Of a DNA stretch of 64,000 nucleotides, positions 3,232 to 24,095 are shown one piece after another. Numbering within the stretch: position 1 is the first letter of the stretch; each line of letters begins with the position of its first letter. Origin of the DNA: Lepidodermella squamata. Its lineage: Eukaryota > Animalia > Gastrotricha. Below the pieces are notes generated by a model. That model made no database searches. It saw only the letters and a list, made by a program, of their open reading frames with translations, and was not told the DNA's origin. The stretch is from assembly GCA_047495785.1 (NCBI GenBank), contig JBLDXI010000009.1, positions 1,302,001 through 1,366,000 on the forward strand. The letters are read 5' to 3'. The translations under genes and the position numbers were made by a program.

Positions 3232-5125
3232 CTAAATGATCTGAGTGTTGGTTTCAACTGATGACCGATAAGACAGGCTATTGGTAGAGGTCATCTTGGC
3301 CGAATGATCAGTGGTAATATGGCCTGAGGAATCGACCCTAGAACTAGACGATTTTTCTTGCATTTCAATCGACGCCACTTCTTTCTTCGATGCGGTACGG
3401 CAGCGATCCGAGAAACAGAACATATTGCGCACCAATGCCATCCATTGGCGATTGGCACCGCAGTAGATGAGGGGCGAGAAGAACGCAAAGGTGGTTGAAA
3501 TCGCATCGAACAACATAGCGTTGTTAGGGTTAGCATATACAACAAGATAACCAGATTGCAATTCCGGGAAGTACCATTGCAAGCACACAATGGCTTCATT
3601 CAGTTGAAGAGGAAAACTCAGCAAAACGAAAGCAGCCAAACAGTACAGACACGTGTACGTTGCACGACGCGTTTGTTGGGCTGTCTTTTCAAGTTGTGCC
3701 TTCTCTGCCTGAGCGGATTTTGAAGTAGAAATTCTGAAAATAAATCGAGCTTCAGTTATGAAAATTTGTAGCAACAGGTTGTTACTCAGGATGAATTGCC
3801 GGTCTTCTTCGCACATTGTTCAATGCGGATGAGTTCGCTGGATTTGAGTTTTTCCTAGAATTCCTTACCACATTTAGATTAGCCCTACGCTTTAACGTGT
3901 ATAAAATTCTGCCGTAGACGACACATAGGATGATTGAAGGAATGTAATACTGCGAAATAGCTTCGTAAGTGCGATAGCCAATATACATTGGCATGAATTG
4001 CTCCCCTGAATACTCCGTATTTAGAATTGAACCACAATAAAGTTGATAGGATGTGTAGAACTCTTCGAGATAGACACCCTTAAAAATTCGAAAAATTTCT
4101 ATTAGGTCACATGTTTACAAAATCTCACATTGAAAGCCACTGTTGGTCCGCATAAGATAATGCACCATACCCAAACTATGATTGCCACCCTATAGGCTCT
4201 TCTCCTCGAGAGTTGACGTTGGCTTTGAAGAGGGTTACAGATAGCTTGATATCGCTCATAGCCAATAACAGCCAGCATGTAGATGGAAACGTTCATTGCC
4301 AGGGTTCGGATGATGGAGAATGCCCTGCAGGTCACATCACCCAGCAATAAAGGCCAGTCGAGATACCATGGTACATTATCAATTCTGACAATCAACTGGT
4401 AAGCCTGTTTGGAAGAATTTGGATTTAATGACACGAAACCGAGCTAATCTTACTCTGATTGGCAGTCTGAGAACAGCTAGTCCAACATTCGCAGCAATCA
4501 GATTGAAAATAAAGAAATTAGTAACAGTTCGAAGTTGGGGATTTCGCACCCAAACGACCATCGAGAGACCGCCAACTTGAGAGACAGCTTATTCAACTAT
4601 TGATAAAATGTATCGAATGCACTTACAAAGTACAGAGCAAGGTATGGTGATTAGATAAATCGCAATAGCTGCCGTCATTTGCCAATATTGGTGAGACGGC
4701 GGGAAGTAGTCATCTCGAACTGCCGGCCGCAAAATGTTGTCATGGCAAACTCGAACAGTGTCGTTGGTGCTACAGGACAGCTGCGTAGTCGGATCAATCT
4801 CTCTGCAAAAGCAGTCGTAAACTTTCCAGGAATAGAGGCCGCACCCCTCGGGAATTCTCGAAGCGTAAATATTTCGACGCAGCCTCATAAAGTCTTCGTA
4901 ACCCTTCCAAAATCTTGACGAGTTGAACGGACTCCTCAGCCAACACGCATTGTCACGGCTTTGCGCAATGGACCACGAAAATACCTTGAGAAACATGTAG
5001 ATGGCGATCTGCGTAGTCTTTTCTGTCTCATTGGTGCCATTATCCTGCAAAATCTGGTCAGTTGTCAGAAGACTGTACGTTTCGTTAAGCTCCAAGGCCT
5101 GTCCCACTAAAAAACTTTCATGCAT
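3232..5125 (-). CDS. Class A GPCR with Cys-rich ectodomain, paralog 2; 5 exons
   Basis: LRTVTNFFIFNLIAAN, GYERYQAICNPL, YYIPSIILCVVYGRI, CLAAFVLLSFP, FSPLIYCG; same exon layout as paralog 1. Confidence 0.9.
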
Positions 5126-7413: not shown

Positions 7414-10400
7414 TTAGATGACGTTGCCATTTCCAACTGCAGGTTCGGCTAATTCGATTTGAAATACTTGATTCGACGATCCGATGATCGTACCCGGGCC
7501 TCCGCCATTGTTCGGACGCGTTTTGTTGATTTTCTCCTTTTCCTTTTTACCCGAACTGTTTTCGACCATATTAAGGATTTGAATTCGATTGCGCAGATTA
7601 GGCTGGAAAAATACGAAATAATTAGTTGAGAAAATTAAGCTTCAATTAAAAAGTTACCCAGAAAATGAACGTGAAAAGCCGATAGATGTATACGGGCAGG
7701 ATGATTATTATGACCACAGCCAAGGTGACTAGCCAAAAATTAGCTGATGACCATACAGCCAGAACGACGCCGTAGTTCTCGTAATCTGTCCTAGACTGGG
7801 CCAAAGCAACGCTGAACAGAAATTGGAAAACGAAGGCTGTTGCTAGGCTCAACAAGGGGGTGATGTTCAGCACGTTCCAATGTGCGGTTTCGATGCTGAC
7901 CCGAACGGTGACTACAATTACCACGCAAGTCCCAACCGCAATTCCCATCGCCGCTCGGCTATTCGTTATCACGTGACCATCCGTATACGCGAAATCAGCG
8001 AAACCGTGTTGCATCAGGAAGAAAATGACAAGCGAATTGACAATGCCTTCGACTATTGAGAACAGGAAATTCCGCCAGTTGAAAAACTGGTTCGTCAAAC
8101 CGGGTTGGTAGAGTTTCGGGTATTTTACGGAATACTCATCAGGGACATCTTTTTCAAAGACGGCGTAGTAAAATACGCAGGTCGATGTGTAGAACAAGTT
8201 GAAGCATGTGATGAAGTAGGTGTCGTACAGCGAGGCGGCTGAAAAGCCGCAGAAGATGCCGAACCATAGGTGGCTGGTTGAGAATGCCATGGTTTTGTAG
8301 AAAAAGAAGCGCATGAAAACGGCGATGCGGTAATAGGACCGCCGGCCATGAACCAGCAGCAAACGTTGAAGAAAGCGAAATTGAGCAAGGGCGAAGTCTG
8401 AGGAAAGCACGGCTTGTCTACCCTCATGTCCCGAAATGCCAACACCAACGTGGGCTGTTCTAATCATACTCCTTAAAATTGAAAAAATCGGTAAATTGTT
8501 CATGAAAAATCAAATTAATCTAGAGACTCACACGTCATTCGCGCCGTCTCCAATCGCAAGAGTAACAGCTTTTTTCTTCCTTTTGACAAGGGCGACTACC
8601 AAGCCCTTTTGAAGCGGGGTTACCCGGCAACATATCACTGCCTGGCACGAGCAAGCCACGCTTAGAAATTCATCCTCCAAATCCGGCGATAACGCATGCG
8701 TCAAGCTATTCCCATTGATAATCAGGGCAAAGTGGCTTTCTGGAGGAAGAGGTACCACTGTTATGCCGTTGCCGTTCAAGAAACTAATGAAAGAAGCATC
8801 AGGCCTGAAGTTTATATCAGTTGGGGTTGATTGTTCCAGCAGTTGCTTCGTCGTCGCCAGCTGCCGTTCTACGTCCTGAAATGTCTCGCCATCGATGACA
8901 AACTCGCGCGTTGAATCAGTCAACATGCGACACGAATGGCCAATGTTAACAGCAGTTTCCTGGCGATCCCCTGTTAACACCCATATCTTCATACCAGCCT
9001 GGCCAAGTTTCATCACAGTTTCCGGTACACCCTCCTGCAGGTTATCTTCAACGGCCGTCGCGCCGACTAGGGTTAAATTTTTTTCGATTTCAGAATAAAG
9101 CTCCATGAGCTTCGCCTCGCGATCCTCTAGTAATAAGCTAGTTTCCTGGAACTTTGCTAGCCATGGGTACCATTCGTCGTCAAGGATACGCTTCGTCGCG
9201 CAGCATAACGTTCGCAGACCTGCGCTCGCGAAGTCATGCAATTGGTCCTTGGTTCGAGATAAAACGTCAAAGTCTATGCTATTCCGGTCAAGAAGCGGCA
9301 AAACAGACGAATCAGCGCCTTTGCAATAAAGCCGTCGCTCACCTTGCCTCATAACAATTACCGACATTCTTTTCCTTATGTTATCAAATTCAAGAACGTT
9401 CAGTAGTTCGTATACAGTGTCCTCGCCAAGAACTCGAACCGTCACGCTTGAATGCGTTCGGTGCAAGTAGACGAAACCGAAATTCCGAGCCGCACCCACG
9501 AGCGCGGCTTCATCCGGCGATTGAGCTTTGTAACTCAACCTATTCGTCGCCTTGTCAACTTCCGCGTTAATCGTATGGCAGAGTGATAATAACAGGAAGA
9601 AATCGCAAACGGACGCTGAGCCGTTTCGAATTTCCTCCAACAGTGTGGCGTCGTAGAACTTGAAATTCGAATCGTAATAATCTGGTTCGTGCTTCGAAAA
9701 ATCAATCGCCGGATGAGCCATTTTGCTGCGATGATGCTGCTTTTTGCCTGATGTTATCATTGTGCCGTAGCATCGCCCGTTAATTGAGCACATGTTGAAT
9801 GTCATTTTATTCTGCGTCAACGTGCCCGTTTTGTCCGAGAAAACGTACTCGATTTGGCCGAGGTCTTCGTTTAGCATCGTCGATCTCGCCTCAGCTCGAG
9901 TGTCCGTCTCGGCGTGATACATTAACTTATCAGCATTTATGAAACCCCGACTGAGAATAGCCTGTTAGGGAAATTAGATGAAAAGATTGGAAAACACCAA
10001 GGTGGTACCTGAATGCTTTCGAATGTAATGTAAAGCGCTATCGGCATCATTGTTTGAATTAAGATCAAGTAAGATGCCATCCACGCGATACCGGTCACAA
10101 ACGGGTTCACGGTCAATACACGAGGAATAGCCACGGAATAGGCCTTCTGGAAAGCTAGTCCAATACCCCGCTCGAAATCCCAAGATACAACAGCAGCGAT
10201 CACCATTATAGAAAACATGAAAGCGAAAATTCCGAAGAAAAACTTGTTCGACATTTTGTCGACATTTGTTCGTTTCAGTTTCGCTTTTCCAGAATTTTTC
10301 ATCAGTTTCGTTTGTTGGCCGGCGTAAATAACGATCCCGAACGCCCATTCCGCATTTCGAACGGTGCAACCTCGAAGTAAGAGATTGTCGTTGTTGAGGG

Positions 10401-11305
10401 AGTAGATATCGCCCAGCCAAGATAGGCGGCCATCGAAGCGTGACAGGTAGCAATTCGGGCCTTCGCATTGAATTTCTCCATTGAACGAACCAAGGCTTTG
10501 AATGTCATTTCCAAGCTTCATTTGCGTGATATCAAGGCTCATGCGATACTTCAAATTCGTCTCGCCGTCAAGATCGGCGGTTTCGATGAAGCAAATGCCG
10601 CTGTTTTCGCTCGAAGATAGCAGTAGTAAATCAGCCGGAACGTCCTCGTTATTTCGCAACGCAACAATCTGGCCGACTTTAATCGACTGCCACTCGACTT
10701 CTTTGATAAGGATAGACCCGGTTTGTTTAGACTTGGTGATTATTCGTGCCTTTCGCGTGTTTATCCGCCGATCAGAACGGTGCCGCACGAGATCATCTGT
10801 GCCGTATTTGAAGGCAGTTAGCAGGAAAATTGCTCCGATCGCCAGAAAATTCGGCAAAGGGGAATTCGGCGAAATAATTGGCAAGGACTATTGATAAATT
10901 TAAATTACCGATATCAAGTCTTCTCAAACAATTTACCTGTAGGATTAGGATGATAATGAAATAAACGTTAGCTATCCGCAAGCATTGTTCCAATAGATTC
11001 AATGGTAGGAAAGTGAGCAAGGTGTATCGAGATGTCCTGATTTTGTTGTTGCTGTAGTACCACTTCGAATTGAATTTCGCATCCGCGCCACGGATGGTGC
11101 GAATATATTGGCGTTCATCCTCACTTTCTCGCCCGAATAGCAGCCGGAAAATTTCTCTCGGATGCCATGGCGAGGGTGGTGAGCGGTTCAAATCAGCCTT
11201 AGAAGCCGCAGCCGCTGGCAAGGAGGTTGATGACGAGGAATTCAGATGTTTGTTAGGGAATAATATCGAACGCACAGCAGCGATCGGATTATTAGAATTC
11301 GACAT
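7414..11305 (-). CDS. ATP8B-like: P4-type phospholipid-translocating ATPase (flippase), ATP8B-like, copy 1
   Basis: [63 protein letters not shown]...LLVHGR; last exon spliced to stop at 7414. Confidence 0.95.
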
Positions 11306-12524
11306 CAACTTTATCTATCATGTACATGAAAACACATGAATAAAACTCAAGTACAAACCTATGCACTTGACTTCTGCAAGAAATCGATGAGTATTAAAAT
11401 GCGTTCACTTTAAAAGCCAAGTATTGAAGAGGCGAGTGAAGATGCCTAATGCAAATTGAAAGAAGAGACGCATATGCTGACCGAACTACTGTAATAAACA
11501 ACTTGAGATGCAGAAGTAGATCACCTTTAATGATGGAAAAGCGGAAAGATTTCGCACAACTTTTAGTTTTGGAAATACGATATGACAACACCGAACTGTC
11601 AACACGTTAACCTTGAATAAAAGGTAACACATACTCGTTTTTTTAATGTATCAACACGTGAATGAAAATAAGTATAAGCTTCAAAAAAACGTTATCGTGA
11701 GCGCCTTAGTAATGTTTTCCAAAGGGTCCTATGGAACAAGGCATGAGTTTTCATGCGGCACCACGCCTTCATTCAATTACATACGTGTTGATTCAATTCT
11801 GGTCACGCCGTCCGCGTTGACAGTAAGGGTGCGTTTTACTTGAATTACCTTCCACGTAATAGGACATCCGTCATCCCTGTCAAGCTCAATCCGTCACGCC
11901 TTGACCCAATCAAAATGTCTATTCGCAGAGTGTCTGGTTTTGATAACACAATTAAAAAAGAACCGGATTAAAAATGAAGGTATTTTATTCTTCAAGAGTC
12001 TTTCGTTTCCTATATGAAAGCCGAAAGAGAGCGCGAATCAGCGAGCATCAGAAGTCTGTGTAATCGATAGGTAAATATATATTGATGCTGTATAATAAAT
12101 GATGTTATTGTGAGGTGCTCATTGAACAATAATTAGTTTTGTCAACAGCAATTATCGTCTTCATTTCCACGCCGTCATAACAATAACAAATGTCGCGAGA
12201 CACGCCTCAATCTCCGCTCAACGCACCGAAGTCGCTCAATTTATATAGATGAGGTCTCGCCACATTTCAGTTAACACTAATATAGTAACACGAAGAAATA
12301 ATCGATACGTTTATATAGTTTCAAGTAAGAACTCCGGAGTGATGCGAAAGACTCGAGTTTCATTCTCTTCGAACATTTTTTACAGGGATTGAATTAGCCA
12401 TCATCAAACTCTAACAATTTTAATTGTTTACCGACTAAAATTCAGCTCGTCAATAATTTCAAGAGAAAATAAGCGCACAAAAAATTGAACTAAACCGGAG
12501 TAGAAAATTACTATGATATTTGTT

Positions 12525-15500
12525 TCACAACACATCGTCATTCGCGGCAAGTCTTGCCCGCGCGTCAGATGATTCATTCACGTTAACAATCGGCTTTCGC
12601 AATTTTACAGTCGAGCCGTTTTGTTGGTGCTTCATTGGACAGTCGGGTTTAGCCGCCACTTGTCGATAGTCGCTTGGTCCCTTTTTCTCATGGGCTTGCA
12701 GCACGCGAACACGATACAGCAGATCAGGCTGAAAAATCGGAAAAAATTTAAATCAGCCATCACTTAGCCATCAAATATTTATAAGTGTCAACTGCTGTAA
12801 AAAAAATTAACTTGAAGCTAAAAAAATTGTCAATTTATTCACATTGAAATTAAAATTTTAATTTTAAATTTTAATTAAATTAATTTAAAAAATAAAAAAA
12901 TACGCAAAATTGTTAAGGAGGATTTTTTAAATTTGGCAAAAATAAAAAAATGAATATCTTACCTTTGTAACATTGATGAGGAATCGGATGAAAATGACCG
13001 GTAAGCAGCAAATCGCGACGGCTAGAACTGCGACGAGCCAGAAGTTGGGCGATGCCCAGACCGCGGCCGCCACTCCGATATTTTCCGAGTCGTACTTTGA
13101 GGCGATTCGCGCAATCACGTACTGGCAGACAAACACGCTGAAAACGCTGAAAAATGGCCCGATACTGGCTCGCGACCAGTGAGTCGTCTCTAAACAGCAC
13201 CGAATGGTGACGACAAGAACGAGAACAGTGCCGAGGGCGATGCAAACGGCTGATTTGCTCGTCGTAACCGGGTCGCCGGAGTAGTGCGTAAAATCGGCAA
13301 AAGCGTATCGAACGAGGAAAAATGTGACCAGCGACGTGAAAATGCCCTCGAGCATTGCGATTAAAAACCGGGTAAATGTAAAGTAGCGACCTTTCAGACC
13401 GGGGTAGTAAGTTTTCGGGTACTTTTGCGCGTAGTACTCGTTTAGATCCTGCTCGAATAGCGACAGGTATAACAGCGGAACAGGCGTGTACATCATGTCG
13501 TAGGCAGTAATGAACCACTGGTCGAAAATCGACGTTCCCGACCAGCCGCAGAAAATTCCGTACCAGAACTGGCTGGTCGCGTAAGCTAGCGTTTTGTAGA
13601 AGAAGAATTTGAGGAAAGTCGCCATTCTCAGGTAGTTCCACCGGCCGTGTACCAGAAGCAGTCGCTGGAGGAAGCGGAATTGGGCAAAAGCGAAATCAGA
13701 TGACAAAACCGCTTGCATTCCTTCATTTCCAGAAATTCCAACGCCGATATGCGCAGTTCGAATCATGTTTCTAAAAAATAAAATAAACGTTAAGAGCCAG
13801 GAACAACACGAAATCATGTCTACACTGAATATTTTGAATCTGCCCTCCACGTAAAGCTTGAGGCTAAAACTTAGTCTCAAGACTTAAAGCCGAAGTCTAC
13901 CCTAAAATCATCAATGTTCAGAATCTTCCGAACTTTTTTGCCTATTTTGTTTTGGTATGTGAGATGTTTCTTGAATATAAATGACCGTATGGACATAAAT
14001 TCAAATTGCTCAACCTAGAAACCAGAGAAGGGGATCCAGATGGAAGAAGTTGATACATCTGACCATTGGATACTCGCAAATGTCCGTTCACTTCGACTAG
14101 GAGCAACCAGTCTTAACGAGACGACCGATTTCGCTGAATTCCGGTCTCGCAGTATTTTACATCAGTACCTCGATTGCGACGTCAACATCGAAGCACTGAC
14201 GCAATGGCTTCTCGGACGAGTGAATTTCACAGGCTCGTTATGTGACTTCTATACTCATGATTTGACTTTGATTGGTTGATGCAGCATACAGCTAAAATTT
14301 GTTGAATTTACTTTATTTTATTTGCTATTGCTCATGTCAGGTACGTCTTCCGACTGAAACTGGACGATGATCTGAATTTCAGCTTTTTTCTCCAAGCTGG
14401 GTCAGGTGGAGCCTATTTGTGCGAATCTTCGGACCTGAATGCACGATTCAATGCGCACATAAACCGCTATAGCGCTGCCATCTGCTCTACCGGAAAACAA
14501 GCGTGGCCATACTACGGCGCTATCGGAAGGCGTCCTACTCCGAAAGACCCTTTCAGACTGTTGTAGGACACAGTTCAGAGGGTAATTTGACCTCATCAAA
14601 TGAAACACAAGCAAGTAAAAAGTTGCCAAGCATGATTTGCAAGTTTCCAAAGGAAACAGTCATCAGATGCGAATTATAACATTCCATTTCATGTTATTTA
14701 AGTTATTTGAACAATTTGCTTAACGTTTGGTACCTGTTTTTCGATATTTGTACTACATGCAGCATTTAGCTTATGTGGTTTTTTAAAGTATTGGTCTTCC
14801 TTTCTCATATTTGTTTTTCAATGCTACTACATCATTTCAAAAGTTTCATACGCAGTTTTCCTTTGTTATTCATTTGTTGCGGGAACTTAAGAACTTGAGA
14901 ACTGTATAACACTCTGTCATCCCCTGACTCTCTGAGCAACTAAAATTCACCGGATTACGCGCCATTATATAGGCCTCTAGGAGTCTAAGCCGACTTGTAT
15001 CAATATTTCGAAAATGACTGGGTCGGCGTTTGGCGATACGGCCAACAAACTGTCCATCTAGAATTCGATTTCGAACTTAGGAGAATGGCCTCATCATGGA
15101 CCTTCAAAAAGAGCAGAATCTGATGGAAGAGAGGGTGGCCGACTTCCGGCTCTGCCGCGATGTCTCGCGATGCTCTGAAAAGAAATATCTGGACGCAAAC
15201 GATGGATCTCAACCCCACTGTGCTGTTAAATCGAGCCTTACATTTTTTATTCTTGGTGGCTAGACTTTAGGCGAAATATCCCGCTATATAGCCGCGGCCA
15301 GCCGATAAAAACACAATTTTTGCTACTGAACTGTAAACACTAGTTCCCAGCAATTTGGCTTGCGTTTCGGTTAGACTTTGATCGATTCAAGTGACTTCCA
15401 GTGACACTGGCCAAATTTTAAATTAAAATTCGTCCTTCTTTTCTTCATTCTAGTTATCATGAAAAACCCTCATCACGGCTTTCACGAAATTTAATTTCGT

Positions 15501-18500
15501 GTGCGTGAAGTTTGGTACTTTTCCAGCTATTTATATAACTAATTATCACCCTTGAAAAATATCGTGGTAAGAAAACTCTTCAGTAACAAAATTAACGGGG
15601 TAAAATTAATGCAATTAAAGCTAAAAATATAAAAAATGGGTCCTCCTTTTAGCGGAACCACATTTTGGAATTTTCTAGTGCCCTGAAATCGTTTTTCGGA
15701 TATTTCTTGCGGGTCAAGATTGGCCACAATAATTCTACAAAAATCACCAGTAAATTCAGCGCAACATTCTCTATAAGACAGAGTGTTTAATTCAGAATTC
15801 ATACTTATCCTAAAATTCGTAGAATTATTCAAAAAAGGACTCGGAGGAACATTTTTCGACTTTTTTCCGCAAAAAGCAAATTTGGTTCCGCTAAAAGATA
15901 TTCTATACAAAATGGACAAATTCGAAGCTTACACATCATTTCCTCCATCACCAATAGCCAGAGTTACGGCGTTCTTCTTCCGCCTAACCAGCTCAACGAC
16001 GCGCCCCTTTTGCAGCGGAGCAGCTCGGCAGCAGATCACCGTCTGACACGAACAGGCCACCTTGAGAAACAAATCTTCCAGCGGTTCAGTCAACGCGTGA
16101 AACAAGCTATGGCCGCTGATAATCAACGCAAAATCAGTTTTCCTCGTCCGCTTCACGCCGCCGTTCATGATGAAAGCTCGAGCCGAATCTGTTCGCTTAA
16201 TACCATTCATCGCATCGGCCTGAGCTCTTCGTTCAATCAAATCGAGCGCATCGCGAAGTTGCTGGTCAACCCCAGGGAAGCACTCGGCATCGACGATCAG
16301 CTCCTCAGTCGAACTCCTCAGCATATTACAAGACTGGCCGATGTTAATCGCAGTTTCCTGCTTATCCCCGGTTAGAACCCAGATTTTAATACCCGCCGCT
16401 GTCAGATTCGCAATCGTCTCCGGGACGCCTTCTTGCAACTTATCTTCAACCCCAGTCGCGCCGATTAAAATCAAATTCTTCTCAATGGCTAAACAGCAGT
16501 CGTAGATAAGCTCCTCACGGTCCTCGAGAGATTTACTCGCCGCCTGGAATTTCGAGTTCCAACTCGCCCATTCCGCATCGTCGATATCTCGATAGGCGCA
16601 GCATAACGTCCTGAGACCACTACTCGCGAATTCGGTCAAATGCTGCCGGGTCCGATCGACCATACCCCGTTGGCTGTCTTTCAACAGAGTTAAAATCGTC
16701 GAATCAGCACCTTTGCACAACAAACGACGTTTCCCGGTCTCATCCTCAATAACTACAGACATTCGTTTCCTCGTAGTGTCAAACTCGAGAAGGGCGAGAA
16801 TTTTATACGTCCTTTCTTCGCCTAAAACTTCGAGAGTTAGTGTCGAATGAGTTCGGCCTTTGAACACAAAACCGAAATTCCGAGCCGCGGAAACCAGGGC
16901 GGCTTCATCCGGCGACTGGGCTTTGTAAGCCAGCCGGCCATTTTCGTCCGTTTCCGTGTTCAGCGTGTGGCAAATTGCGAGTAACAGGAAGAAATCGTGG
17001 CAGTCGCCGTTGCGAACAGCATCGAGCAGACTGTGGTCGTAGAACTTGAAGTCCCGTTCATGAAAAGTAGGCTCGTGCTTCTCGAAATTAACCCGTAATT
17101 CAACCTCATTTTCCGCGCATAAATACACGTGCTCGCCGGTTTTCGGGTCCCGGGGCTCGCCGTACGCGACCCCGCCAATCGAGCACTTATTGAAGTTCAT
17201 CACGTTCTGGGTCAACGTGCCGGTTTTATCCGAAAAAATGTACTCGATCTGGCCGAGATCTTCGTTTAACAGCGTCGACCTAGCCTGGGCTCGAGTATCT
17301 GTCTCAGGGTGGTACATATCCTGGTCGCCGTTGATGAAATAGCGACTGAGGAAAATTTGAATAAATTCAATTGTTGTGTACAGCGTGACAGGTAGTAGAC
17401 GTTGCACGAGTAAGAAGTACGACAGACATTGCCAAATTGCGATTTTGAGTGGGGAGGCGCCTTCGATTTGCATCCACAAGCCGTAAGCCTCCTTAAAATG
17501 CAGACCGATGCCGCTTTCGAACAAATAACCCTGAATAGCCGAGGTCGTCAGAAGAATTACCATAATGACAAACAGACCTAAAAAATCAAAGAAAAATTTG
17601 AAAGAAATCTAGAACTTGATTCAACTTACCACAAAGGTACTTATTCAGCTGCTTTTCCATTCGAGTGCGCTTATACAGTGTCTTACCGGCGTTTTTCATC
17701 AGTTTAGTCTGACGGCCGGTGTAAATTACGAGCCCGTAGGCCCATTCAGTATTTCGAAGGGTGCAACCCCGAAGTAGAACATTCGTATTATTCAACGCAT
17801 AGGTCTGACCAAGCCAGTCGAGACGGCCGGTAAAACGGGTCAAATGATTATTCGGGGCATCGCATTTAATCTCACCTATAATAAAAAAATTAATCATTTT
17901 AAATTTAAAATAAATTTAAGGTGGAATTACCATTAAAAGATGCCAGTTGACTCAAATCGTCAGCCATAGCAGATGTGCACGAAACGGTTTGTCGAAACTT
18001 GAGGTTAGTTTCGCCATCCAATTCAGCAGTATCAATGTAGCACAGGCCATTAGCCTCGCTAGACGACAGCAGGATCATATCAGCGGGGACAGCCTCGTTT
18101 TTGTTGAGTTTCACAACTTGACCGACATGGATTTTAGCCCACGTTGTCGATTTCAACTGCTGGCTGTCTGTGTCTAAAATTGTGGCCTGGCGATTGTTGA
18201 CGCGACGGTCGGATCTGGCACGAAAAAAATCATCGACGCCCTGCCGGATAGCAGTGACGGACATAATAACACCTACAAATCAAATTACGGGGTAATAAAA
18301 TTATTCATGAAACCGAAAATACTCACTTAGGACGATTGCTTTCGGCAAAGGACCGATTGGCGAAATGAGAGGAATAGCCTGAAAAATAATAAAATTATTT
18401 AGCGAATTTTATAATTTTTTCTAAATTTTTGTTACCTGTAAGAAGACGAGTACGAGGAAGTAAATATTGGCTGTGCGAAGGAATTGCTCGAAGAGATTCA

Positions 18501-18987
18501 GCGGAATAAAAGTGTAAATGTTGTAACGCGAGGTTTTGATTGAATTATCACAGTATTTCATCTTGGCGTTGAACTTGGCGTCGCTGCCTCGAACAACGCG
18601 CTGCGATTCCGGCCGGTCGTGCGGCTCGAACATGCGGTAAAAAAGATGCTGCAGGCTCCATTCCCGCCACGACGCATGGCTGAAGAAAGAGCGGCGCCAT
18701 GGCTTCTTGCCGATGTCGAGCTCAAAGTGGCGCCGAGCTTCCGACGCCGTTTCACTAACCGGGGTAATGGCGGCGATTGACAGAGCCGACTGCGACGAAA
18801 TGCCATTCAGGTGCTGAGTTTTCGTCGACAGAGGCAGCAATTTCTGCTTCGCGGCTCGGTGGTCGTTTTCTAAATCTCGCTCCTCTACATGGCTGTTATC
18901 AAAAGCGGCAGCCTCCGGTGAGTGATTTCCGGTGGCCGGGCAGTGATTGTCGTTATCTCGCTCGTCATTATCGTCTCCAGCTGCCAT
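12525..18987 (-). CDS. ATP8B-like: P4-type flippase, ATP8B-like, copy 2 (contains a roughly 2.15-kb intron at about 13771-15930)
   Basis: [44 protein letters not shown]|[23 protein letters not shown]; last exon ends at 12525. Confidence 0.95.
15646..15897. repeat. Inverted repeat pair (MITE-like remnant) in the long flippase intron
   Basis: cttttagcggaacca at 15646-15660 and its exact reverse complement tggttccgctaaaag at 15883-15897. Confidence 0.55.
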
Positions 18988-20653: not shown

Positions 20654-23050
20654 TTATTCGTGTTCATCCTGCGGATGGCTCTGTCTTTGGCTCTTTCTCA
20701 GAATCAGCGACATAGCTTGCCAGTTGATAATCGCCGAAGTTACAGTTGAGCTGAATAGTAGCAAAAATGCCATCAAGATATGCTGATTCAGGGCATTGTT
20801 AATGACATTAAGAGCAAGCACGCCGCCAACCATGAGCGAAGCTTGATTTCCAACAGCTTGGCGAACGTACTTCATCCCCATCGCTTTTTCAGCCCGTCGA
20901 AGTTGGTAAGCCAACAGACCTGAAGCAAGCAGTAAGACGGCATTCATGACTAATAGAGCTATTTCGAATGCATGCGAAGTGTTGGAGTAGCAAGCGCCGA
21001 TATAGCTAATTTTGAGGACATCATTCTCGACATCATTCACGACTTCTCGCTGCGTCTCAAAGTAAAGAGACGGGTCAGTTGCCATCCATGCCAAGAGTGT
21101 AATCAAAATCGCGATGAGATAAATAAAGAATAAGAGAAGCAAAAGAGATTCTCGGATTGGTACATCCCTATTACTAGATGTGTGCCGAACGACTCGATGC
21201 TCAAAATACGAACTGGAATCCGTGGAAACCTTAGGATTCCGTTGTGTTGAATTTGTCGAATTTGTAGTATTTGCAGTATACCATGTCGTCCGCTGATTTC
21301 TTATAGACTGCGATGATTTCCGTCGATTACTCGCGGCTTTTGCAACGTAAAGCCTGACGTAGAGGAAAATGTGTATCCCAGAGAGACCCAACACGGCAAG
21401 AGATGTCCTGGCAATGCAGAGGACATTCGCTTCCCTAATTTTCATCTGAGTCGAATAAAGAACCGCTGATAAATTCATGAAAATACACGCAAGTGTGGTA
21501 ATGCTGATTTTGGTCTTAGGGTAATCTTGCTGAATTTCCTGTAAATTGCGATGCGCAATTTTGAAGCCCGCCATCGCTATGTTTAACAAAGACACAAAGA
21601 TTGCCCAGGCTAGGACAACTCCAAAAACAACCTGAGGAACTTCATGATAGTCGTACAGAATTTCGATAGAATCTTTTGGCGGTAAGCCAGTCTTCGTCTT
21701 CCAACTTATTGGCTGTGAACTCTTCATTTCGTAGTCATCAATGCCGTAACCCGAAGCGTTGGACTTCCTTAAAAGTCTAGCTAATATTTCATAGCCACTC
21801 GATCGCGACCATCTCATTACATATTGCACTTCATCATCCATTTCGAGTCGTTCGGAATATTTTACGAAGCCAGTTCTAACCCCGGTGTAGGTAACTTTCC
21901 CGACAGTTGCGTTTACAACGTTCAACACCAAGTTCGGATTAGTTTTGTAGTCTCGCAGTGAAAGGTTCATTGTTTTCAACACCTGTTCTGCTTTGTCCAA
22001 CGTTACAGCGGCCTGAAGAGCCATGTCGTAGCAAATGTGCCGGCGATCGTAATCGCCGCTTCGCGAATTGTTCATCGCCTTATCCGCTAATTCTTCAACT
22101 TGATTGACATCTAATCCGAAAAAACTGCTCGGGCCATTGTTCGCCATCGCAACTATTGCAGGACCAATGCTGAACGTCAGCTCTGCTTGAGATCGCAAAA
22201 TTTCAGGTGTACAGCCGGCTGGCAAAGCTGGTAAAGGGTCCATAACTGGTTGGTTATTCGAATCGATGATGAATACGTATTTCGGCCCTGATAACCCGAA
22301 ACGGTGAGCCCAGCATAAAAACTTGACTGTATTTCCAACATCCGAAAATTGGGCGATAATAATTCGAGCTCCGCTGTCTCTCAACATGGCCATTGAAATG
22401 TCGTCCACGTCAAGAAATGCGTTGAAGAATTGAATGTCGAATCCTAATTGTTGGCTGAAGTCGTAGAAAGCAAGGCCCATTTGAACGTTGAAAATGTTAG
22501 CGGCATGCATGAACACCGCAATTTTCTTCCATGTCTTCTGTTGGCTGATGAAAACAGCCCTAACAAGGGTTGTCATCTCACCCGATGGGCGAACCCGGTA
22601 GAAATTAGGATAGACCTTACGATTAGCTGTGAAATAGGGTGCAGTACAAGCCGATGCGATTGTAGCCATTCCGAGGTGATGAACGACCTTGCCAAGACTG
22701 TTGCAGCCTGGGGTGAAGGTCGAGCCAACTGTTAAGGGTGATTGAAACGCGTTCATCTCGGTATCGAAACTTCGGGAGAATTTGACAGCTTTCGAAACTA
22801 ACAGATCACTGTTACGAGTTTCGTCTTCGAAAACTGGTTCAATGGCGTAATCTGGCAGGATATCGGTTCGATTATTTGCCAGTTTCGTGACAAGTTCAGT
22901 TACAGCTCTGCAGTGCTTGCCATCGCGCGGTTCTGCCCCGGTGAAGGCCATAGTGAATAGCAATTTCAAGCGATACGGTTTGCTAATAGCCAAAACATGT
23001 GTTATTGGCAAGACGAAACTCAAGAGGACGATCACCCTTAATTTTTCCAT
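20654..23050 (-). CDS. Intronless class C GPCR, GABA-B-receptor-like (Venus flytrap plus 7TM, no Cys-rich domain)
   Basis: Signal peptide MEKLRVIVLLSFVLPITHVLA; NNRTDILPDY, YPNFYRV, WKKIA, ARIII, GLSGPKYVFII, PPKD; seven hydrophobic segments with AWMATDP at the end of TM4. Confidence 0.88.
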   Translation of the reverse strand: MEKLRVIVLLSFVLPITHVLAISKPYRLKLLFTMAFTGAEPRDGKHCRAVTELVTKLANNRTDILPDYAIEPVFEDETRNSDLLVSKAVKFSRSFDTEMNAFQSPLTVGSTFTPGCNSLGKVVHHLGMATIASACTAPYFTANRKVYPNFYRVRPSGEMTTLVRAVFISQQKTWKKIAVFMHAANIFNVQMGLAFYDFSQQLGFDIQFFNAFLDVDDISMAMLRDSGARIIIAQFSDVGNTVKFLCWAHRFGLSGPKYVFIIDSNNQPVMDPLPALPAGCTPEILRSQAELTFSIGPAIVAMANNGPSSFFGLDVNQVEELADKAMNNSRSGDYDRRHICYDMALQAAVTLDKAEQVLKTMNLSLRDYKTNPNLVLNVVNATVGKVTYTGVRTGFVKYSERLEMDDEVQYVMRWSRSSGYEILARLLRKSNASGYGIDDYEMKSSQPISWKTKTGLPPKDSIEILYDYHEVPQVVFGVVLAWAIFVSLLNIAMAGFKIAHRNLQEIQQDYPKTKISITTLACIFMNLSAVLYSTQMKIREANVLCIARTSLAVLGLSGIHIFLYVRLYVAKAASNRRKSSQSIRNQRTTWYTANTTNSTNSTQRNPKVSTDSSSYFEHRVVRHTSSNRDVPIRESLLLLLFFIYLIAILITLLAWMATDPSLYFETQREVVNDVENDVLKISYIGACYSNTSHAFEIALLVMNAVLLLASGLLAYQLRRAEKAMGMKYVRQAVGNQASLMVGGVLALNVINNALNQHILMAFLLLFSSTVTSAIINWQAMSLILRKSQRQSHPQDEHE

Positions 23051-24095
23051 TCTGATATCGTTTAAGAATTTCCTAGGCGCAAATAATAGCAAAAGGATTC
23101 ACTATTCTGATGGCTGGTCATATAGTATGGAATTCTGAATATATTGCTTGTATAAATTTAGATCTTAGGCTAAGGCAGTTTTTGAGATTAGGAAGCTAAT
23201 TTCAAGCTTAAGTGAGGAATGCCTGACTTTGTGCGTCCAGTGACCGTGCACCATTAGATGCGCGGGAGGGGAGAAACCGGAGAGATGTAAACCAATACTT
23301 TGCCACTTTGCCATATCATTCGATTTATTTTCGCACAATGCTTAAAACAATGCCATCCGTTGTATTGGATTGAAATAACCTTTTTGTACATTCTCGGTAC
23401 GCAATTCTACGCAATTCGAGGGGTATGCCGTCTTGTTCAGCAAAATTTGAACGAAGATTTGAGACATTTTTCAGTTGATATGTTGGCGTCCTATGCAGCT
23501 CGTCGGCATTAAGCATGCGAACTTCCTGTTGAACATTTTCTCATCCGACCTGCCACGAGAGCGTGATGAACGTGTTTCGTTACAAGTTTTTACCAGGCTC
23601 CTCTCGAAATTATTTGCTCAGTAACTAAAAAAATTCAGATTTGGCGCGGGGTATGAGGAAGTCTATTAAAAGGTCATATTCAACACCGAAAACAGGAAGC
23701 TCTGAGCTTATTCCGGCTATTAGGTATCGGCATACCTTAGTTCGGATAAAATCGCGAATTTCAAGTCAGGTATTTTGCGTTTTATTGTGAAACTCAAGGA
23801 ATCATCATTTTTGGCAATAAATTGTAAAAAAATGCGAATAATAAACGCGGATAATTGCACAGTAGCGAGAGTCACAGTATCATATACCAAATAAATTAAA
23901 GCCGGAATACTATTCGAGTCAATTTTTAGCGAGGTTTCACCTCTTATTCGCTGCACAGCAGCTAAAACCGTAATAAATTTTTCTAGCATTTTTTACCAAT
24001 TTTTCGAAATAAAAAAAATGATTAGCTTCTATTTACAGTCAAGCGGATTTGCGTATATACTGGTTCAAGCGGAAGTTTCTGAGAAATTTCTGTTT

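What the first reader, a model, noticed from the sequence alone, without database searches (positions are those of the whole stretch)
10025..17410. ATP8B-backbone flippases carrying the glucosylceramide-type TM4 glutamine
Seen: TM4 is ILIQTMMPIALY (Gln codon 10054-10056) in copy 1 and [12 protein letters not shown] (17402-17404) in copy 2. Known: ATP8A/ATP8B have Asn four residues before the PISL proline, whereas Gln there (Dnf1/Dnf2 YQS motif, ATP10A/D) is required for glucosylceramide flipping. The cytosolic domains here look ATP8B-like. The near-invariant PISL is also altered (PIAL, PVTL), and TM5 YKN is YKT in both. Inference: an independently evolved glycolipid or novel-lipid flippase pair.
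Basis: partly seen in the sequence, partly recalled or inferred. Interest (0 to 1): 0.72.

Follow-up and report, generated by a model that had tools for sequence, protein, structure and literature searches.

The report
ATP8B flippases with rebuilt lipid pocket
Two neighbouring genes of a little-sampled small animal encode intact lipid-flipping pumps of the ATP8B family in which most or all of the residues that normally grip the lipid have been replaced and then kept, so they probably move a different lipid, though nothing shows that it is glucosylceramide.

Summary
Both minus-strand genes are complete, intron-containing P4-ATPases (1226 and 1282 aa). Both have Gln at TM4 Pro-4, PIAL or PVTL instead of PISL, and YKT instead of YKN.

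They are the two most derived members of a six-gene tandem cluster. A metagenomic relative carries an orthologous pair with the same changes.

With the TM4 columns masked, the eight Gln-type proteins form one clade inside animal ATP8B. Holding them with the Gln-bearing fungal Dnf clade is rejected (p-AU 1.7e-5). All 229 database animal ATP8B proteins examined have Asn and PISL.

The change reaches beyond one residue. Of the six residues that contact lipid in human ATP8B1, copy 1 has replaced four and copy 2 all six. The catalytic motifs are intact, non-synonymous divergence is moderate while synonymous sites are saturated, and copy 2 is transcribed and spliced.

So convergent origin of the Gln and a remodelled substrate site are supported. 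Glucosylceramide transport is not supported: the other published determinants are absent.

The scan made the same point before, on the four upstream paralogues (s1-405067).

I rate this a new variant of a known kind, of moderate interest.

The parts
7414..11305 (-). Copy 1 (cluster member G5): complete P4-ATPase gene of 5 exons (11305-10937, 10887-10009, 9961-8532, 8471-7658, 7602-7414), 1226 aa. Its four introns are 47-60 nt, all GT..AG.
   Evidence: The model was built from ORF segments and splice sites and has a single terminal stop. DGET, DKTGT, KGAD, TGD and GDGAND are present. The best PDB match is ATP8B1. PF16212 hits the C-terminal exon at 237 bits. Contigs of the RNA-like run X1 cover it only patchily, at word depth about 6.
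12525..18987 (-). Copy 2 (cluster member G6): complete P4-ATPase gene of 7 exons (18987-18436, 18378-18327, 18272-17931, 17875-17630, 17577-15933, 13770-12963, 12728-12525), 1282 aa.
   Evidence: The model has a single terminal stop and all introns are GT..AG. Spliced contigs of run X1 confirm intron 5 (15932-13771, 2162 nt) and intron 6 (12962-12729, 234 nt). X1 word depth is about 100 on the exons laid and 0 in the intergenic bins 11200-11799. DGET, DKTGT, KGAD, TGD and GDGGND are present. The best PDB match is ATP8B1 at 400 bits.
10030..10065 (-). Copy 1 TM4 core ILIQTMMPIALY: Gln401 (codon 10056-10054) in place of ATP8B1 Asn397, and Ala in place of Ser403 of PISL.
17378..17413 (-). Copy 2 TM4 core [12 protein letters not shown]: Gln456 (codon 17404-17402) in place of Asn397, Val in place of the gate Ile402, and Thr in place of Ser403.
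10846..10942 (-). Copy 1 TM1-TM2 loop LQSLPIISPNSPLPNF, interrupted by intron 1 (10936-10888). The TM1 Gln (ATP8B1 Q131) is kept. TM2 Thr143 and Thr144 are replaced by Pro and Asn.
   Evidence: Read directly from the DNA. The stretch aligns to ATP8B1 without gaps and at equal length.
18337..18441 (-). Copy 2 TM1-TM2 loop [16 protein letters not shown], interrupted by intron 1 (18435-18379). The TM1 Gln is kept. Thr143 and Thr144 are replaced by Pro and Lys.
8291..8308 (-). Copy 1 TM5 FFFYKT: the conserved Lys (ATP8B1 K957) is kept and Asn958 is replaced by Thr.
13590..13607 (-). Copy 2 TM5 FFFYKT: the Lys is kept and Asn958 is replaced by Thr.
13479..13505 (-). Copy 2 TM6 AYDMMYTPV: ATP8B1 Asn989 is replaced by Asp and Ser994 by Pro. 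Copy 1 keeps both residues (CFNLFYTST, 8206-8180).

Best explanation
Both genes encode working P4-ATPase lipid flippases of ATP8B descent. They belong to a lineage-specific, tandemly expanded subfamily: six genes on this contig and at least two in a related organism.

The ATP-driven core is unchanged, but the lipid-binding groove has been rebuilt in steps. Step one is shared by all eight members: the TM4 headgroup anchor Asn (ATP8B1 N397) became Gln. Step two is shared by the sub-clade that holds the window's two genes. In it the PISL Ser (S403, the sensor of the phosphate or sn-2 ester) became Ala or Thr. The Asn after the TM5 Lys became Thr. The Arg that ends TM4 became Gln. The C-terminal G(Y/F)AFS autoinhibitory motif was lost. 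In the members whose TM2 could be read (the window's two genes and MG_A), both TM2 threonines that hand the headgroup over (T143, T144) are replaced; G1-G3 have each changed one or both as well.

The most likely consequence is a changed headgroup and/or backbone selectivity, and a changed regulation, compared with canonical ATP8B pumps. The pumps would work with the genome's single CDC50 subunit.

Shown: sequence features, phylogenetic position, conservation across two organisms, and transcription and splicing of copy 2. Inferred: that they flip lipid, and that the substrate differs. The lipid is unknown.
For: Gene integrity and catalytic motifs.

ATP8B identity.

Phylogeny: the eight Gln-type rows form one clade (support 100) on a stem of 0.40 inside the animal ATP8B clade (support 99), with TM4 masked. 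The genome's own Asn-type ATP8B genes (C41, C57) lie outside that clade.

AU test: a joint clade with the Gln-bearing Dnf-like group costs 108.3 log-likelihood units, p 1.7e-5.

Invariance elsewhere: 229 of 229 database ATP8B proteins have Asn and PISL.

Lipid-contact residues of ATP8B1 (T143, T144, N397, S403, N989, S994; Cheng et al. 2022; review PMC11225554): copy 1 has changed 4 of 6 against a 15.5% background at equally conserved columns (P 6e-3). Copy 2 has changed 6 of 6 against 16.2% (P 1.4e-5). Its orthologue MG_A has also changed 6 of 6.

Conservation of the derived states: a second organism has the same gene order and the same Gln, PVTL or PLAL, and K-T states. dN is 0.30 and 0.45 while synonymous sites are saturated (pS 0.81).

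Transcription: spliced contigs cover copy 2.

Loss of GYAFS: absent from copies 1 and 2, kept in G1, G2, C41 and C57.

Precedent: vertebrate ATP8B3 (P0103, 'ATPase IK') also has a non-Asn Pro-4, PMAM and YKT.
Against: There are no functional data of any kind.

Human ATP8B1 accepts many glycerophospholipids through a water network, with almost identical side-chain positions for each. Side-chain changes may therefore alter kinetics rather than the substrate list.

Copy 1 has only patchy, low-depth RNA support, and its TM4 exon was only partly covered. The TM4 region of copy 2 lay outside the stretch on which reads were laid.

Run X1 is recorded only as 'RNA?', a guess.

No ATP10 sequence could be obtained for the tree.

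The trees used approximate exon-chained models for the paralogues outside the window.

The tree is the quick search (SH-aLRT support only). The bootstrap search did not finish.
Confidence: 0.7

Rival explanations
1. One reading: the Gln makes these pumps glucosylceramide or other glycosphingolipid flippases. They would have evolved convergently with Dnf1/Dnf2 and ATP10A/D, perhaps filling the place of an ATP10-type pump that this genome lacks.
For: Pro-4 Gln is required for GlcCer transport in Dnf2 and ATP10D, and Gln-to-Asn abolishes it. The genome holds 11 P4-ATPase loci and none is of the Dnf or ATP10 type. Several GT21-family loci exist, the family that includes ceramide glucosyltransferase. 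In copy 1 the loss of the PISL Ser, which in ATP8B1 senses the sn-2 ester, would fit a backbone without that ester.
Against: The Gln was shown to be necessary, not sufficient. GlcCer selection needs cooperating residues in TM1, TM4 and TM6. The TM1 motif here is QS or QA, as in ATP8B1, not GA. Pro-3 is Thr in copy 1 and Arg in copy 2, and Ser-to-Thr at Pro-3 of Dnf2 specifically lost GlcCer transport. The known GlcCer flippases in the alignment keep PISL. The same Gln is described as the hallmark of PC transporters, and the only effect of N397Q reported for ATP8B1 is lower PS-stimulated activity. The GT21 hits were not checked for being true GlcCer synthases.
Confidence: 0.1
2. The pumps are still ordinary broad-range glycerophospholipid (PC/PE/PS) flippases. 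The pocket substitutions would be compensated or near-neutral, and the expansion would serve tissue- or stage-specific expression rather than a new substrate.
For: ATP8B1 occludes PC, PS and PI in the same way through water molecules. The TM1 Gln, the TM5 Lys and the Pro+4 Tyr are kept. Tandem expansions often partition expression. The word depth of the laid contigs differs between copy 2 (about 100) and copy 1 (about 6) in one RNA-like run, although the tool warns that contig depth cannot rank genes.
Against: Single substitutions at these same positions (T143A, T144A, N397Q, N397A, S403Y, N989A, S994R) each lowered the PS-stimulated ATPase activity of ATP8B1. These positions do not vary in 229 other animal ATP8B proteins. 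The changes are concentrated at lipid contacts well above the background rate.
Confidence: 0.15
3. The genes are decaying or non-transporting paralogues under relaxed constraint, so the pocket changes mark a loss of lipid transport.
For: Residues otherwise invariant are lost, including the PISL Ser and, in copy 2, Asn989. The autoinhibitory motif is lost. The clade sits on a long stem.
Against: Both reading frames are complete, with canonical splice sites and all catalytic motifs. The derived states are shared with orthologues in another organism across saturated synonymous divergence, with dN of only 0.30-0.45. Copy 2 is transcribed and correctly spliced.
Confidence: 0.05

Closest known systems
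ATP8B1 / ATP8B2 / ATP8B4 (class 1b P4A-ATPases; human ATP8B1-CDC50 structures 7PY4, 7VGH, 8OX4)
   Same: These are the best sequence matches over every exon: 400 and 202 bits to ATP8B1, and about 45% identity to ATP8B2/4 for the orthologue P0011. The genes are placed inside the animal ATP8B clade. The TM1 motif LQ(A/S)xPxIS, the TM5 Lys, and the DGET, DKTGT and GDGxND motifs are shared.
   Different: Pro-4 is Gln instead of the invariant Asn397. Thr143 and Thr144 are replaced. The PISL Ser403 is replaced by Ala or Thr. Asn958 is replaced by Thr. In copy 2, Asn989 and Ser994 are also replaced. The C-terminal G(Y/F)AFS autoinhibitory motif is missing.
Vertebrate ATP8B3 ('phospholipid-transporting ATPase IK')
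   Same: It is another ATP8B-derived paralogue whose pocket has drifted from the canon. Its Pro-4 is not Asn (Ser), PISL is degenerate (PMAM), and TM5 reads YKT.
   Different: It arose independently, as sister to ATP8B1 within vertebrates. It has Ser, not Gln, at Pro-4 and keeps Thr143. It is a single gene rather than a tandem cluster.
Dnf1/Dnf2 and ATP10A/ATP10D (GlcCer/PC flippases)
   Same: They share Gln at TM4 Pro-4.
   Different: They belong to a different clade (AU test p 1.7e-5 against the fungal Dnf-like group). The window genes lack the TM1 GA motif and the Pro-3 Ser, and do not keep PISL. ATP10 itself could not be put in the tree.

Membership tests
P4-ATPase (lipid flippase, P4A) | P-type phosphorylation motif DKTGT and the P4-type A-domain motif DGET | tested here: met
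   Copy 1 has DGET at residue 230 and DKTGT at 459. Copy 2 has DGET at 287 and DKTGT at 514.
P4-ATPase (lipid flippase, P4A) | PhoLip_ATPase_C domain (PF16212) and full-length similarity to solved P4-ATPases | tested here: met
   PF16212 scores 237 and 230 bits on the two C-terminal exons. All P4A structures are hit, and Ca-ATPases only weakly.
P4-ATPase (lipid flippase, P4A) | TM4 PISL motif | tested here: not met
   The motif is PIAL in copy 1 and PVTL in copy 2. The Pro and Leu are kept. The Ser is lost in both, and the gate Ile is Val in copy 2. G1-G3 of the same clade keep PISL.
P4-ATPase (lipid flippase, P4A) | Conserved TM5 lysine | tested here: met
   Lys is present in all eight Gln-type proteins.
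P4-ATPase (lipid flippase, P4A) | CDC50 beta-subunit available | tested here: met
   The genome has one CDC50 locus (C1:2746785-2747612, 171 bits). Binding was not tested.
ATP8B subfamily (class 1b) | Phylogenetic placement inside the animal ATP8B clade | tested here: met
   Shown by FastTree (148 rows) and by IQ-TREE quick search under LG+C20 (57 rows, TM4 masked). Support for the clade is 99-100, and named ATP8B1, ATP8B2 and ATP8B4 sequences lie inside it.
ATP8B subfamily (class 1b) | Asn at TM4 Pro-4 (ATP8B1 N397) and the two TM2 threonines (T143, T144) | tested here: not met
   Gln at Pro-4, and Pro-Asn (copy 1) or Pro-Lys (copy 2) in TM2. 229 of 229 other ATP8B proteins have Asn.
ATP8B subfamily (class 1b) | C-terminal G(Y/F)AFS autoinhibitory motif | tested here: not met
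   The motif is absent from both modelled C-termini and from all frames of their regions. It is present in G1, G2, C41 and C57.
GlcCer flippases (Dnf1/2, ATP10A/D) | Gln at TM4 Pro-4 | tested here: met
GlcCer flippases (Dnf1/2, ATP10A/D) | Membership of the Dnf/ATP10 clade | tested here: not met
   The AU test rejects a joint clade with the Dnf-like sequences (delta lnL 108.3, p 1.7e-5). No ATP10 sequence was available. None appeared among the best hits.
GlcCer flippases (Dnf1/2, ATP10A/D) | Cooperating determinants: the TM1 GA motif and the Pro-3 Ser of YQS (Dnf2) | tested here: not met
   TM1 reads QS or QA. Pro-3 is Thr or Arg. The determinants are taken from Roland et al..
GlcCer flippases (Dnf1/2, ATP10A/D) | GlcCer transport activity | not testable with these tools
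   This needs lipid uptake or ATPase assays.

The most novel reading that the evidence does not exclude
The derived sub-clade (copy 1, copy 2, G4 and their metagenomic orthologues) has left glycerophospholipids altogether. On this reading, the loss of the sn-2-ester-sensing Ser403 and of both headgroup-anchoring threonines, with Gln at Pro-4, would make them flippases for a sphingolipid, glycolipid, ether lipid or other amphiphile. The substrate switch would have been built from an ATP8B scaffold independently of Dnf and ATP10.
Probability: 0.2. Interest if true: 0.7.

Novelty: new variant of a known kind. Interest (0 to 1): 0.45.

Why it matters
How P4-ATPases choose their lipid is still debated, and most of the evidence comes from point mutants of a few yeast and human pumps. 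This cluster is a natural series with the same ATP8B backbone. At one end are canonical Asn-type genes in the same genome. In the middle are Gln-only members (G1-G3). At the other end are members in which most or every ATP8B1 lipid-contact residue has been replaced and then conserved. Expressing the series would test directly which of these residues set headgroup and backbone selectivity. It would also show whether the Pro-4 Gln is enough to open an ATP8B pump to glycosphingolipids. The practical limit is that the host is an unsampled animal lineage and no function is known.

Tried and rejected
1. ATP10 reference for the tree: none was obtained. ATP10 did not appear among the best 150 representatives or the best 120 hits of three word-index searches. 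A motif scan of all 526 fetched proteins found none. The Dnf/ATP10 test therefore rests on fungal and holozoan Dnf-like sequences only.

2. Bootstrap ('careful') tree: it did not finish in two 300-s runs. The quick tree and the AU test were used instead.

3. Organism identity: not resolved. The canonical paralogue C41 has one 74% hit, in an ENA metagenome, and at most 48% identity to any named animal. Earlier scan notes gave no taxon.

4. dN/dS as a ratio: synonymous sites are saturated (pS 0.81), so only dN and the qualitative statement of constraint are given.

5. Structure prediction of the pocket: not attempted. A joined spliced model has no reference. The single-exon pieces separate TM1-4 from TM5-6, and the two metagenomic products together exceed the size limit of the complex tool.

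Searches used single exons by reference. Joined models were made only inside local scripts, for coordinates, motif checks and trees.

7. One X1 contig aligns only to 10059-10179 of copy 1, with unaligned ends on both sides, and the boundaries are not splice sites. This is unexplained. It may be a chimeric contig or a contig broken at a variant.


Full report
**Observation**

The window is G000:C9:1302001-1366000, part of a 121-Mb genome of 151 contigs with short introns. The minus strand carries two P4-ATPase genes in tandem.

- Copy 1 reads ILIQTMMPIALY at 10065-10030, with the Gln codon at 10056-10054.
- Copy 2 reads [12 protein letters not shown] at 17413-17378, with the Gln codon at 17404-17402.
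- HMMER alignments to human ATP8B1 put both Gln residues on Asn397, four residues before Pro401.
- The PISL motif is PIAL in copy 1 and PVTL in copy 2, and TM5 reads FFFYKT in both.

One detail differs: coordinate 10025 lies inside the TM4 coding sequence, and that exon ends at 10009.

**Gene models**

I built both models from ORF segments and canonical splice sites inside local scripts.

| Gene | Exons | Protein | Introns |
|---|---|---|---|
| Copy 1 | 11305-10937, 10887-10009, 9961-8532, 8471-7658, 7602-7414 | 1226 aa | four, 47-60 nt |
| Copy 2 | 18987-18436, 18378-18327, 18272-17931, 17875-17630, 17577-15933, 13770-12963, 12728-12525 | 1282 aa | six |

- All introns are GT..AG.
- DGET, DKTGT, KGAD, TGD and GDGxND are intact in both.
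Searches used single exons by reference.

**Transcription**

One public run (X1, recorded only as 'RNA?') behaves like cDNA.

- Its contigs skip exactly 13771-15932 (2162 nt) and 12729-12962 (234 nt), both GT..AG on the minus strand.
- It has no depth in the intergenic bins 11200-11799 or in the intron bin 13800-13999.
- Word depth is about 100 on the copy 2 exons that were laid.
- Copy 1 has only patchy contigs at depth about 6.
- The TM4 region of copy 2 lay outside the 6000 letters laid.

**The pair is part of a cluster**

A six-frame search of the genome found six tandem, same-strand paralogues on C9 between 1271 and 1321 kb. I call them G1 to G6; copy 1 is G5 and copy 2 is G6. All six have Gln at Pro-4.

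| Member | TM4 core |
|---|---|
| G1 | LILVQTVIPISLY |
| G2, G3 | LILIQTLIPISLY |
| G4 | LILMQQILPITLY |

The rest of the genome's P4-ATPase set is as follows.

- Two Asn-type ATP8B-like genes (C41, C57).
- One ATP8A-like gene.
- One ATP11-like gene (best PDB match ATP11C).
- One ATP9-like gene.

That makes eleven loci, none of the Dnf or ATP10 type. There is one CDC50 locus and several GT21-family loci.

**Relatives elsewhere**

An exhaustive HMMER search of 1.84 billion representatives with the 544-aa exon of copy 2 found a single protein sharing Gln and PVTL. It is P0011, 694 aa and 64% identical, from ENA metagenomes.

Its contigs (L034, L035; GC 39.5%) carry two tandem genes, in the same transcription order as copy 2 then copy 1.

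- MG_A: LILVQQLLPVTLY, with FFFFKT in TM5.
- MG_B: LILLQTLLPLALY.

In the tree MG_A is sister to copy 2. MG_B sits with copy 1 in an unresolved position. The duplications and the derived residues therefore predate the split of the two organisms.

Between the orthologues, dN is 0.30 (copy 2 against MG_A) and 0.45 (copy 1 against MG_B). Synonymous sites are saturated (pS about 0.81). That pattern indicates long-term constraint, not decay.

**Family placement**

- PDB matches: the A-domain/TM1-4 exon of copy 1 scores 202 bits to ATP8B1, against 150 to Drs2 and ATP8A1 and 135 to Dnf1. The large exon of copy 2 scores 400 bits to ATP8B1.
- Named hits: every source-named hit among the best 120 for P0011 that carries a subtype name is an ATP8B type, almost all ATP8B2 ('ID') or ATP8B4 ('IM'), at about 45% identity.
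- FastTree: in a tree of 148 rows, the eight Gln-type rows form a clade inside the animal ATP8B clade.
- IQ-TREE quick search (LG+C20 PMSF, 57 rows, 1061 columns, TM4 columns masked so that the trait cannot drive the result):
  - The eight rows again form one clade (support 100, stem 0.40).
  - That clade sits inside animal ATP8B (support 99), with a sponge sequence at the base and named ATP8B1, ATP8B2 and ATP8B4 within it.
  - The Gln-bearing fungal and holozoan Dnf-like group lies apart.
- AU test: holding the Gln-type rows with the Dnf-like rows costs 108.3 log-likelihood units, p-AU 1.7e-5.
- Wider sample: all 229 animal ATP8B-class proteins from two searches have Asn at Pro-4 and PISL, and all 220 readable ones have Asn after the TM5 Lys.

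The Gln is therefore a derived, convergent state within ATP8B. One limitation remains: I could not obtain an ATP10 sequence.

**The change is larger than one residue**

The published roles of the pocket residues in human ATP8B1 are these.

- The PS headgroup is held by Thr143, Thr144 and Asn397.
- The phosphate and glycerol backbone are held by Ser403, Asn989 and Ser994.
- T143A, T144A, N397Q, N397A, S403Y, N989A and S994R each lower PS-stimulated ATPase activity.
- The authors note that Gln at this TM4 position is typical of PC transporters (PMC9168909).
- Ser403 contacts the phosphate or the sn-2 ester carbonyl. That ester is needed for activation, and sphingomyelin does not activate (PMC10657443).
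- A review generalises the TM4 Asn, the two TM2 Thr residues and the TM1 Gln as the headgroup relay (PMC11225554).

| ATP8B1 residue | T143 | T144 | N397 | S403 | N989 | S994 |
|---|---|---|---|---|---|---|
| Copy 1 | Pro | Asn | Gln | Ala | Asn (kept) | Ser (kept) |
| Copy 2 | Pro | Lys | Gln | Thr | Asp | Pro |

- Copy 1 has changed 4 of 6. At columns equally conserved in Asn-type ATP8B, it has changed 15.5% (hypergeometric P 6e-3).
- Copy 2 has changed 6 of 6, against a 16.2% background (P 1.4e-5).
- MG_A has also changed 6 of 6.
- The TM1-TM2 stretch aligns to ATP8B1 without gaps and at equal length, so the TM2 assignments are secure.
- The TM1 Gln, the TM5 Lys and the Pro+4 Tyr are kept.

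**Order of events within the clade**

- G1-G3 have the Gln but keep PISL and YKN. G1 and G2 also keep the C-terminal GYAFS autoinhibitory motif.
- G4, copy 1, copy 2, MG_A and MG_B share four further changes. The PISL Ser is lost, the TM5 Asn is Thr, the Arg that ends TM4 is Gln, and no GYAFS motif is found.

The window's two genes are thus the most derived members.

Vertebrate ATP8B3 (P0103, named 'ATPase IK') is an independent precedent. It has Ser at Pro-4, PMAM in place of PISL, and YKT.

**Interpretation**

The best reading is a lineage-specific ATP8B-derived subfamily of working flippases whose substrate groove and regulation have been remodelled and then conserved. This most likely changes headgroup and/or backbone selectivity.

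The glucosylceramide reading is not supported beyond the single Gln.

- Roland et al. showed necessity, not sufficiency, and showed that residues in TM1, TM4 and TM6 cooperate.
- Here TM1 is QS or QA rather than GA.
- Pro-3 is Thr or Arg, and Ser-to-Thr at Pro-3 abolished GlcCer transport in Dnf2.

Three facts keep a non-glycerophospholipid substrate possible. The genome has no Dnf or ATP10-type pump, it has GT21-family genes, and copy 1 has lost the ester-sensing Ser. I put that possibility at about 0.2.

Two further rivals are less likely given the evidence above: unchanged broad specificity (0.15) and decay (0.05).

**Relation to earlier scan notes**

Note s1-405067 reported the same Gln in the four upstream paralogues, with a similar conclusion. 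My own searches agree with it and add the following.

- The window's two genes belong to the same six-gene cluster.
- They are its most derived members.
- An orthologous pair exists in a second organism.
- The AU test rejects a shared origin with the Dnf-type Gln.
- The lipid-contact analysis shows how far the pocket has changed.
- Copy 2 has splicing evidence.

**Verdict**

This is a new variant of a known kind, of moderate interest, because it offers a ready-made natural series for testing substrate-selectivity rules in P4-ATPases.

Noticed in passing
window 15646-15897 (inside intron 5 of copy 2): A 252-nt MITE-like element with 20-nt terminal inverted repeats (95% complementary) lies 35 nt from the intron's donor site. 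The genome search gave 436 first-look candidates; of the 40 scored, most of the full-length matches are 85-88% identical. Depth in a DNA run is about 100-fold above the flanking sequence.
   Followed up: partly
G000:C9:1271000-1321000 (window 7414-18987 plus about 31 kb upstream of the window): The six tandem Gln-type ATP8B genes form a graded series. G1 and G2 keep PISL, YKN and the C-terminal GYAFS motif. G3 keeps PISL and YKN. G4, G5 and G6 have lost all three.
   Followed up: partly
window 20654-23092 (minus strand): An 812-aa open frame encodes a class C GPCR (ANF_receptor plus 7tm_3) directly upstream of copy 2.
   Followed up: no
window 4102-5125 (minus strand): Exons of a rhodopsin-type GPCR (7tm_1, with an ERY motif) lie downstream of copy 1. 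The preceding 178-aa exon has no Pfam match.
   Followed up: no
window 10059-10179: One contig of the RNA-like run X1 matches these 121 bases exactly. It has 125 and 48 further letters that fit nothing in 10000-15999, and the boundaries are not splice sites. This is unexplained; it may be a chimeric contig or one broken at a variant.
   Followed up: no
L025 (G000:C41:48001-58000) and protein P0044: The canonical Asn-type ATP8B paralogue C41 has a 74% identical relative only in an ENA metagenome, and is at most 48% identical to any named animal protein. The source lineage therefore seems absent from annotated databases.
   Followed up: partly
G000:C1:2746785-2747612: This is the only CDC50 locus found in the genome, so a single beta-subunit would have to serve all ten P4A-type pumps.
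   Followed up: no
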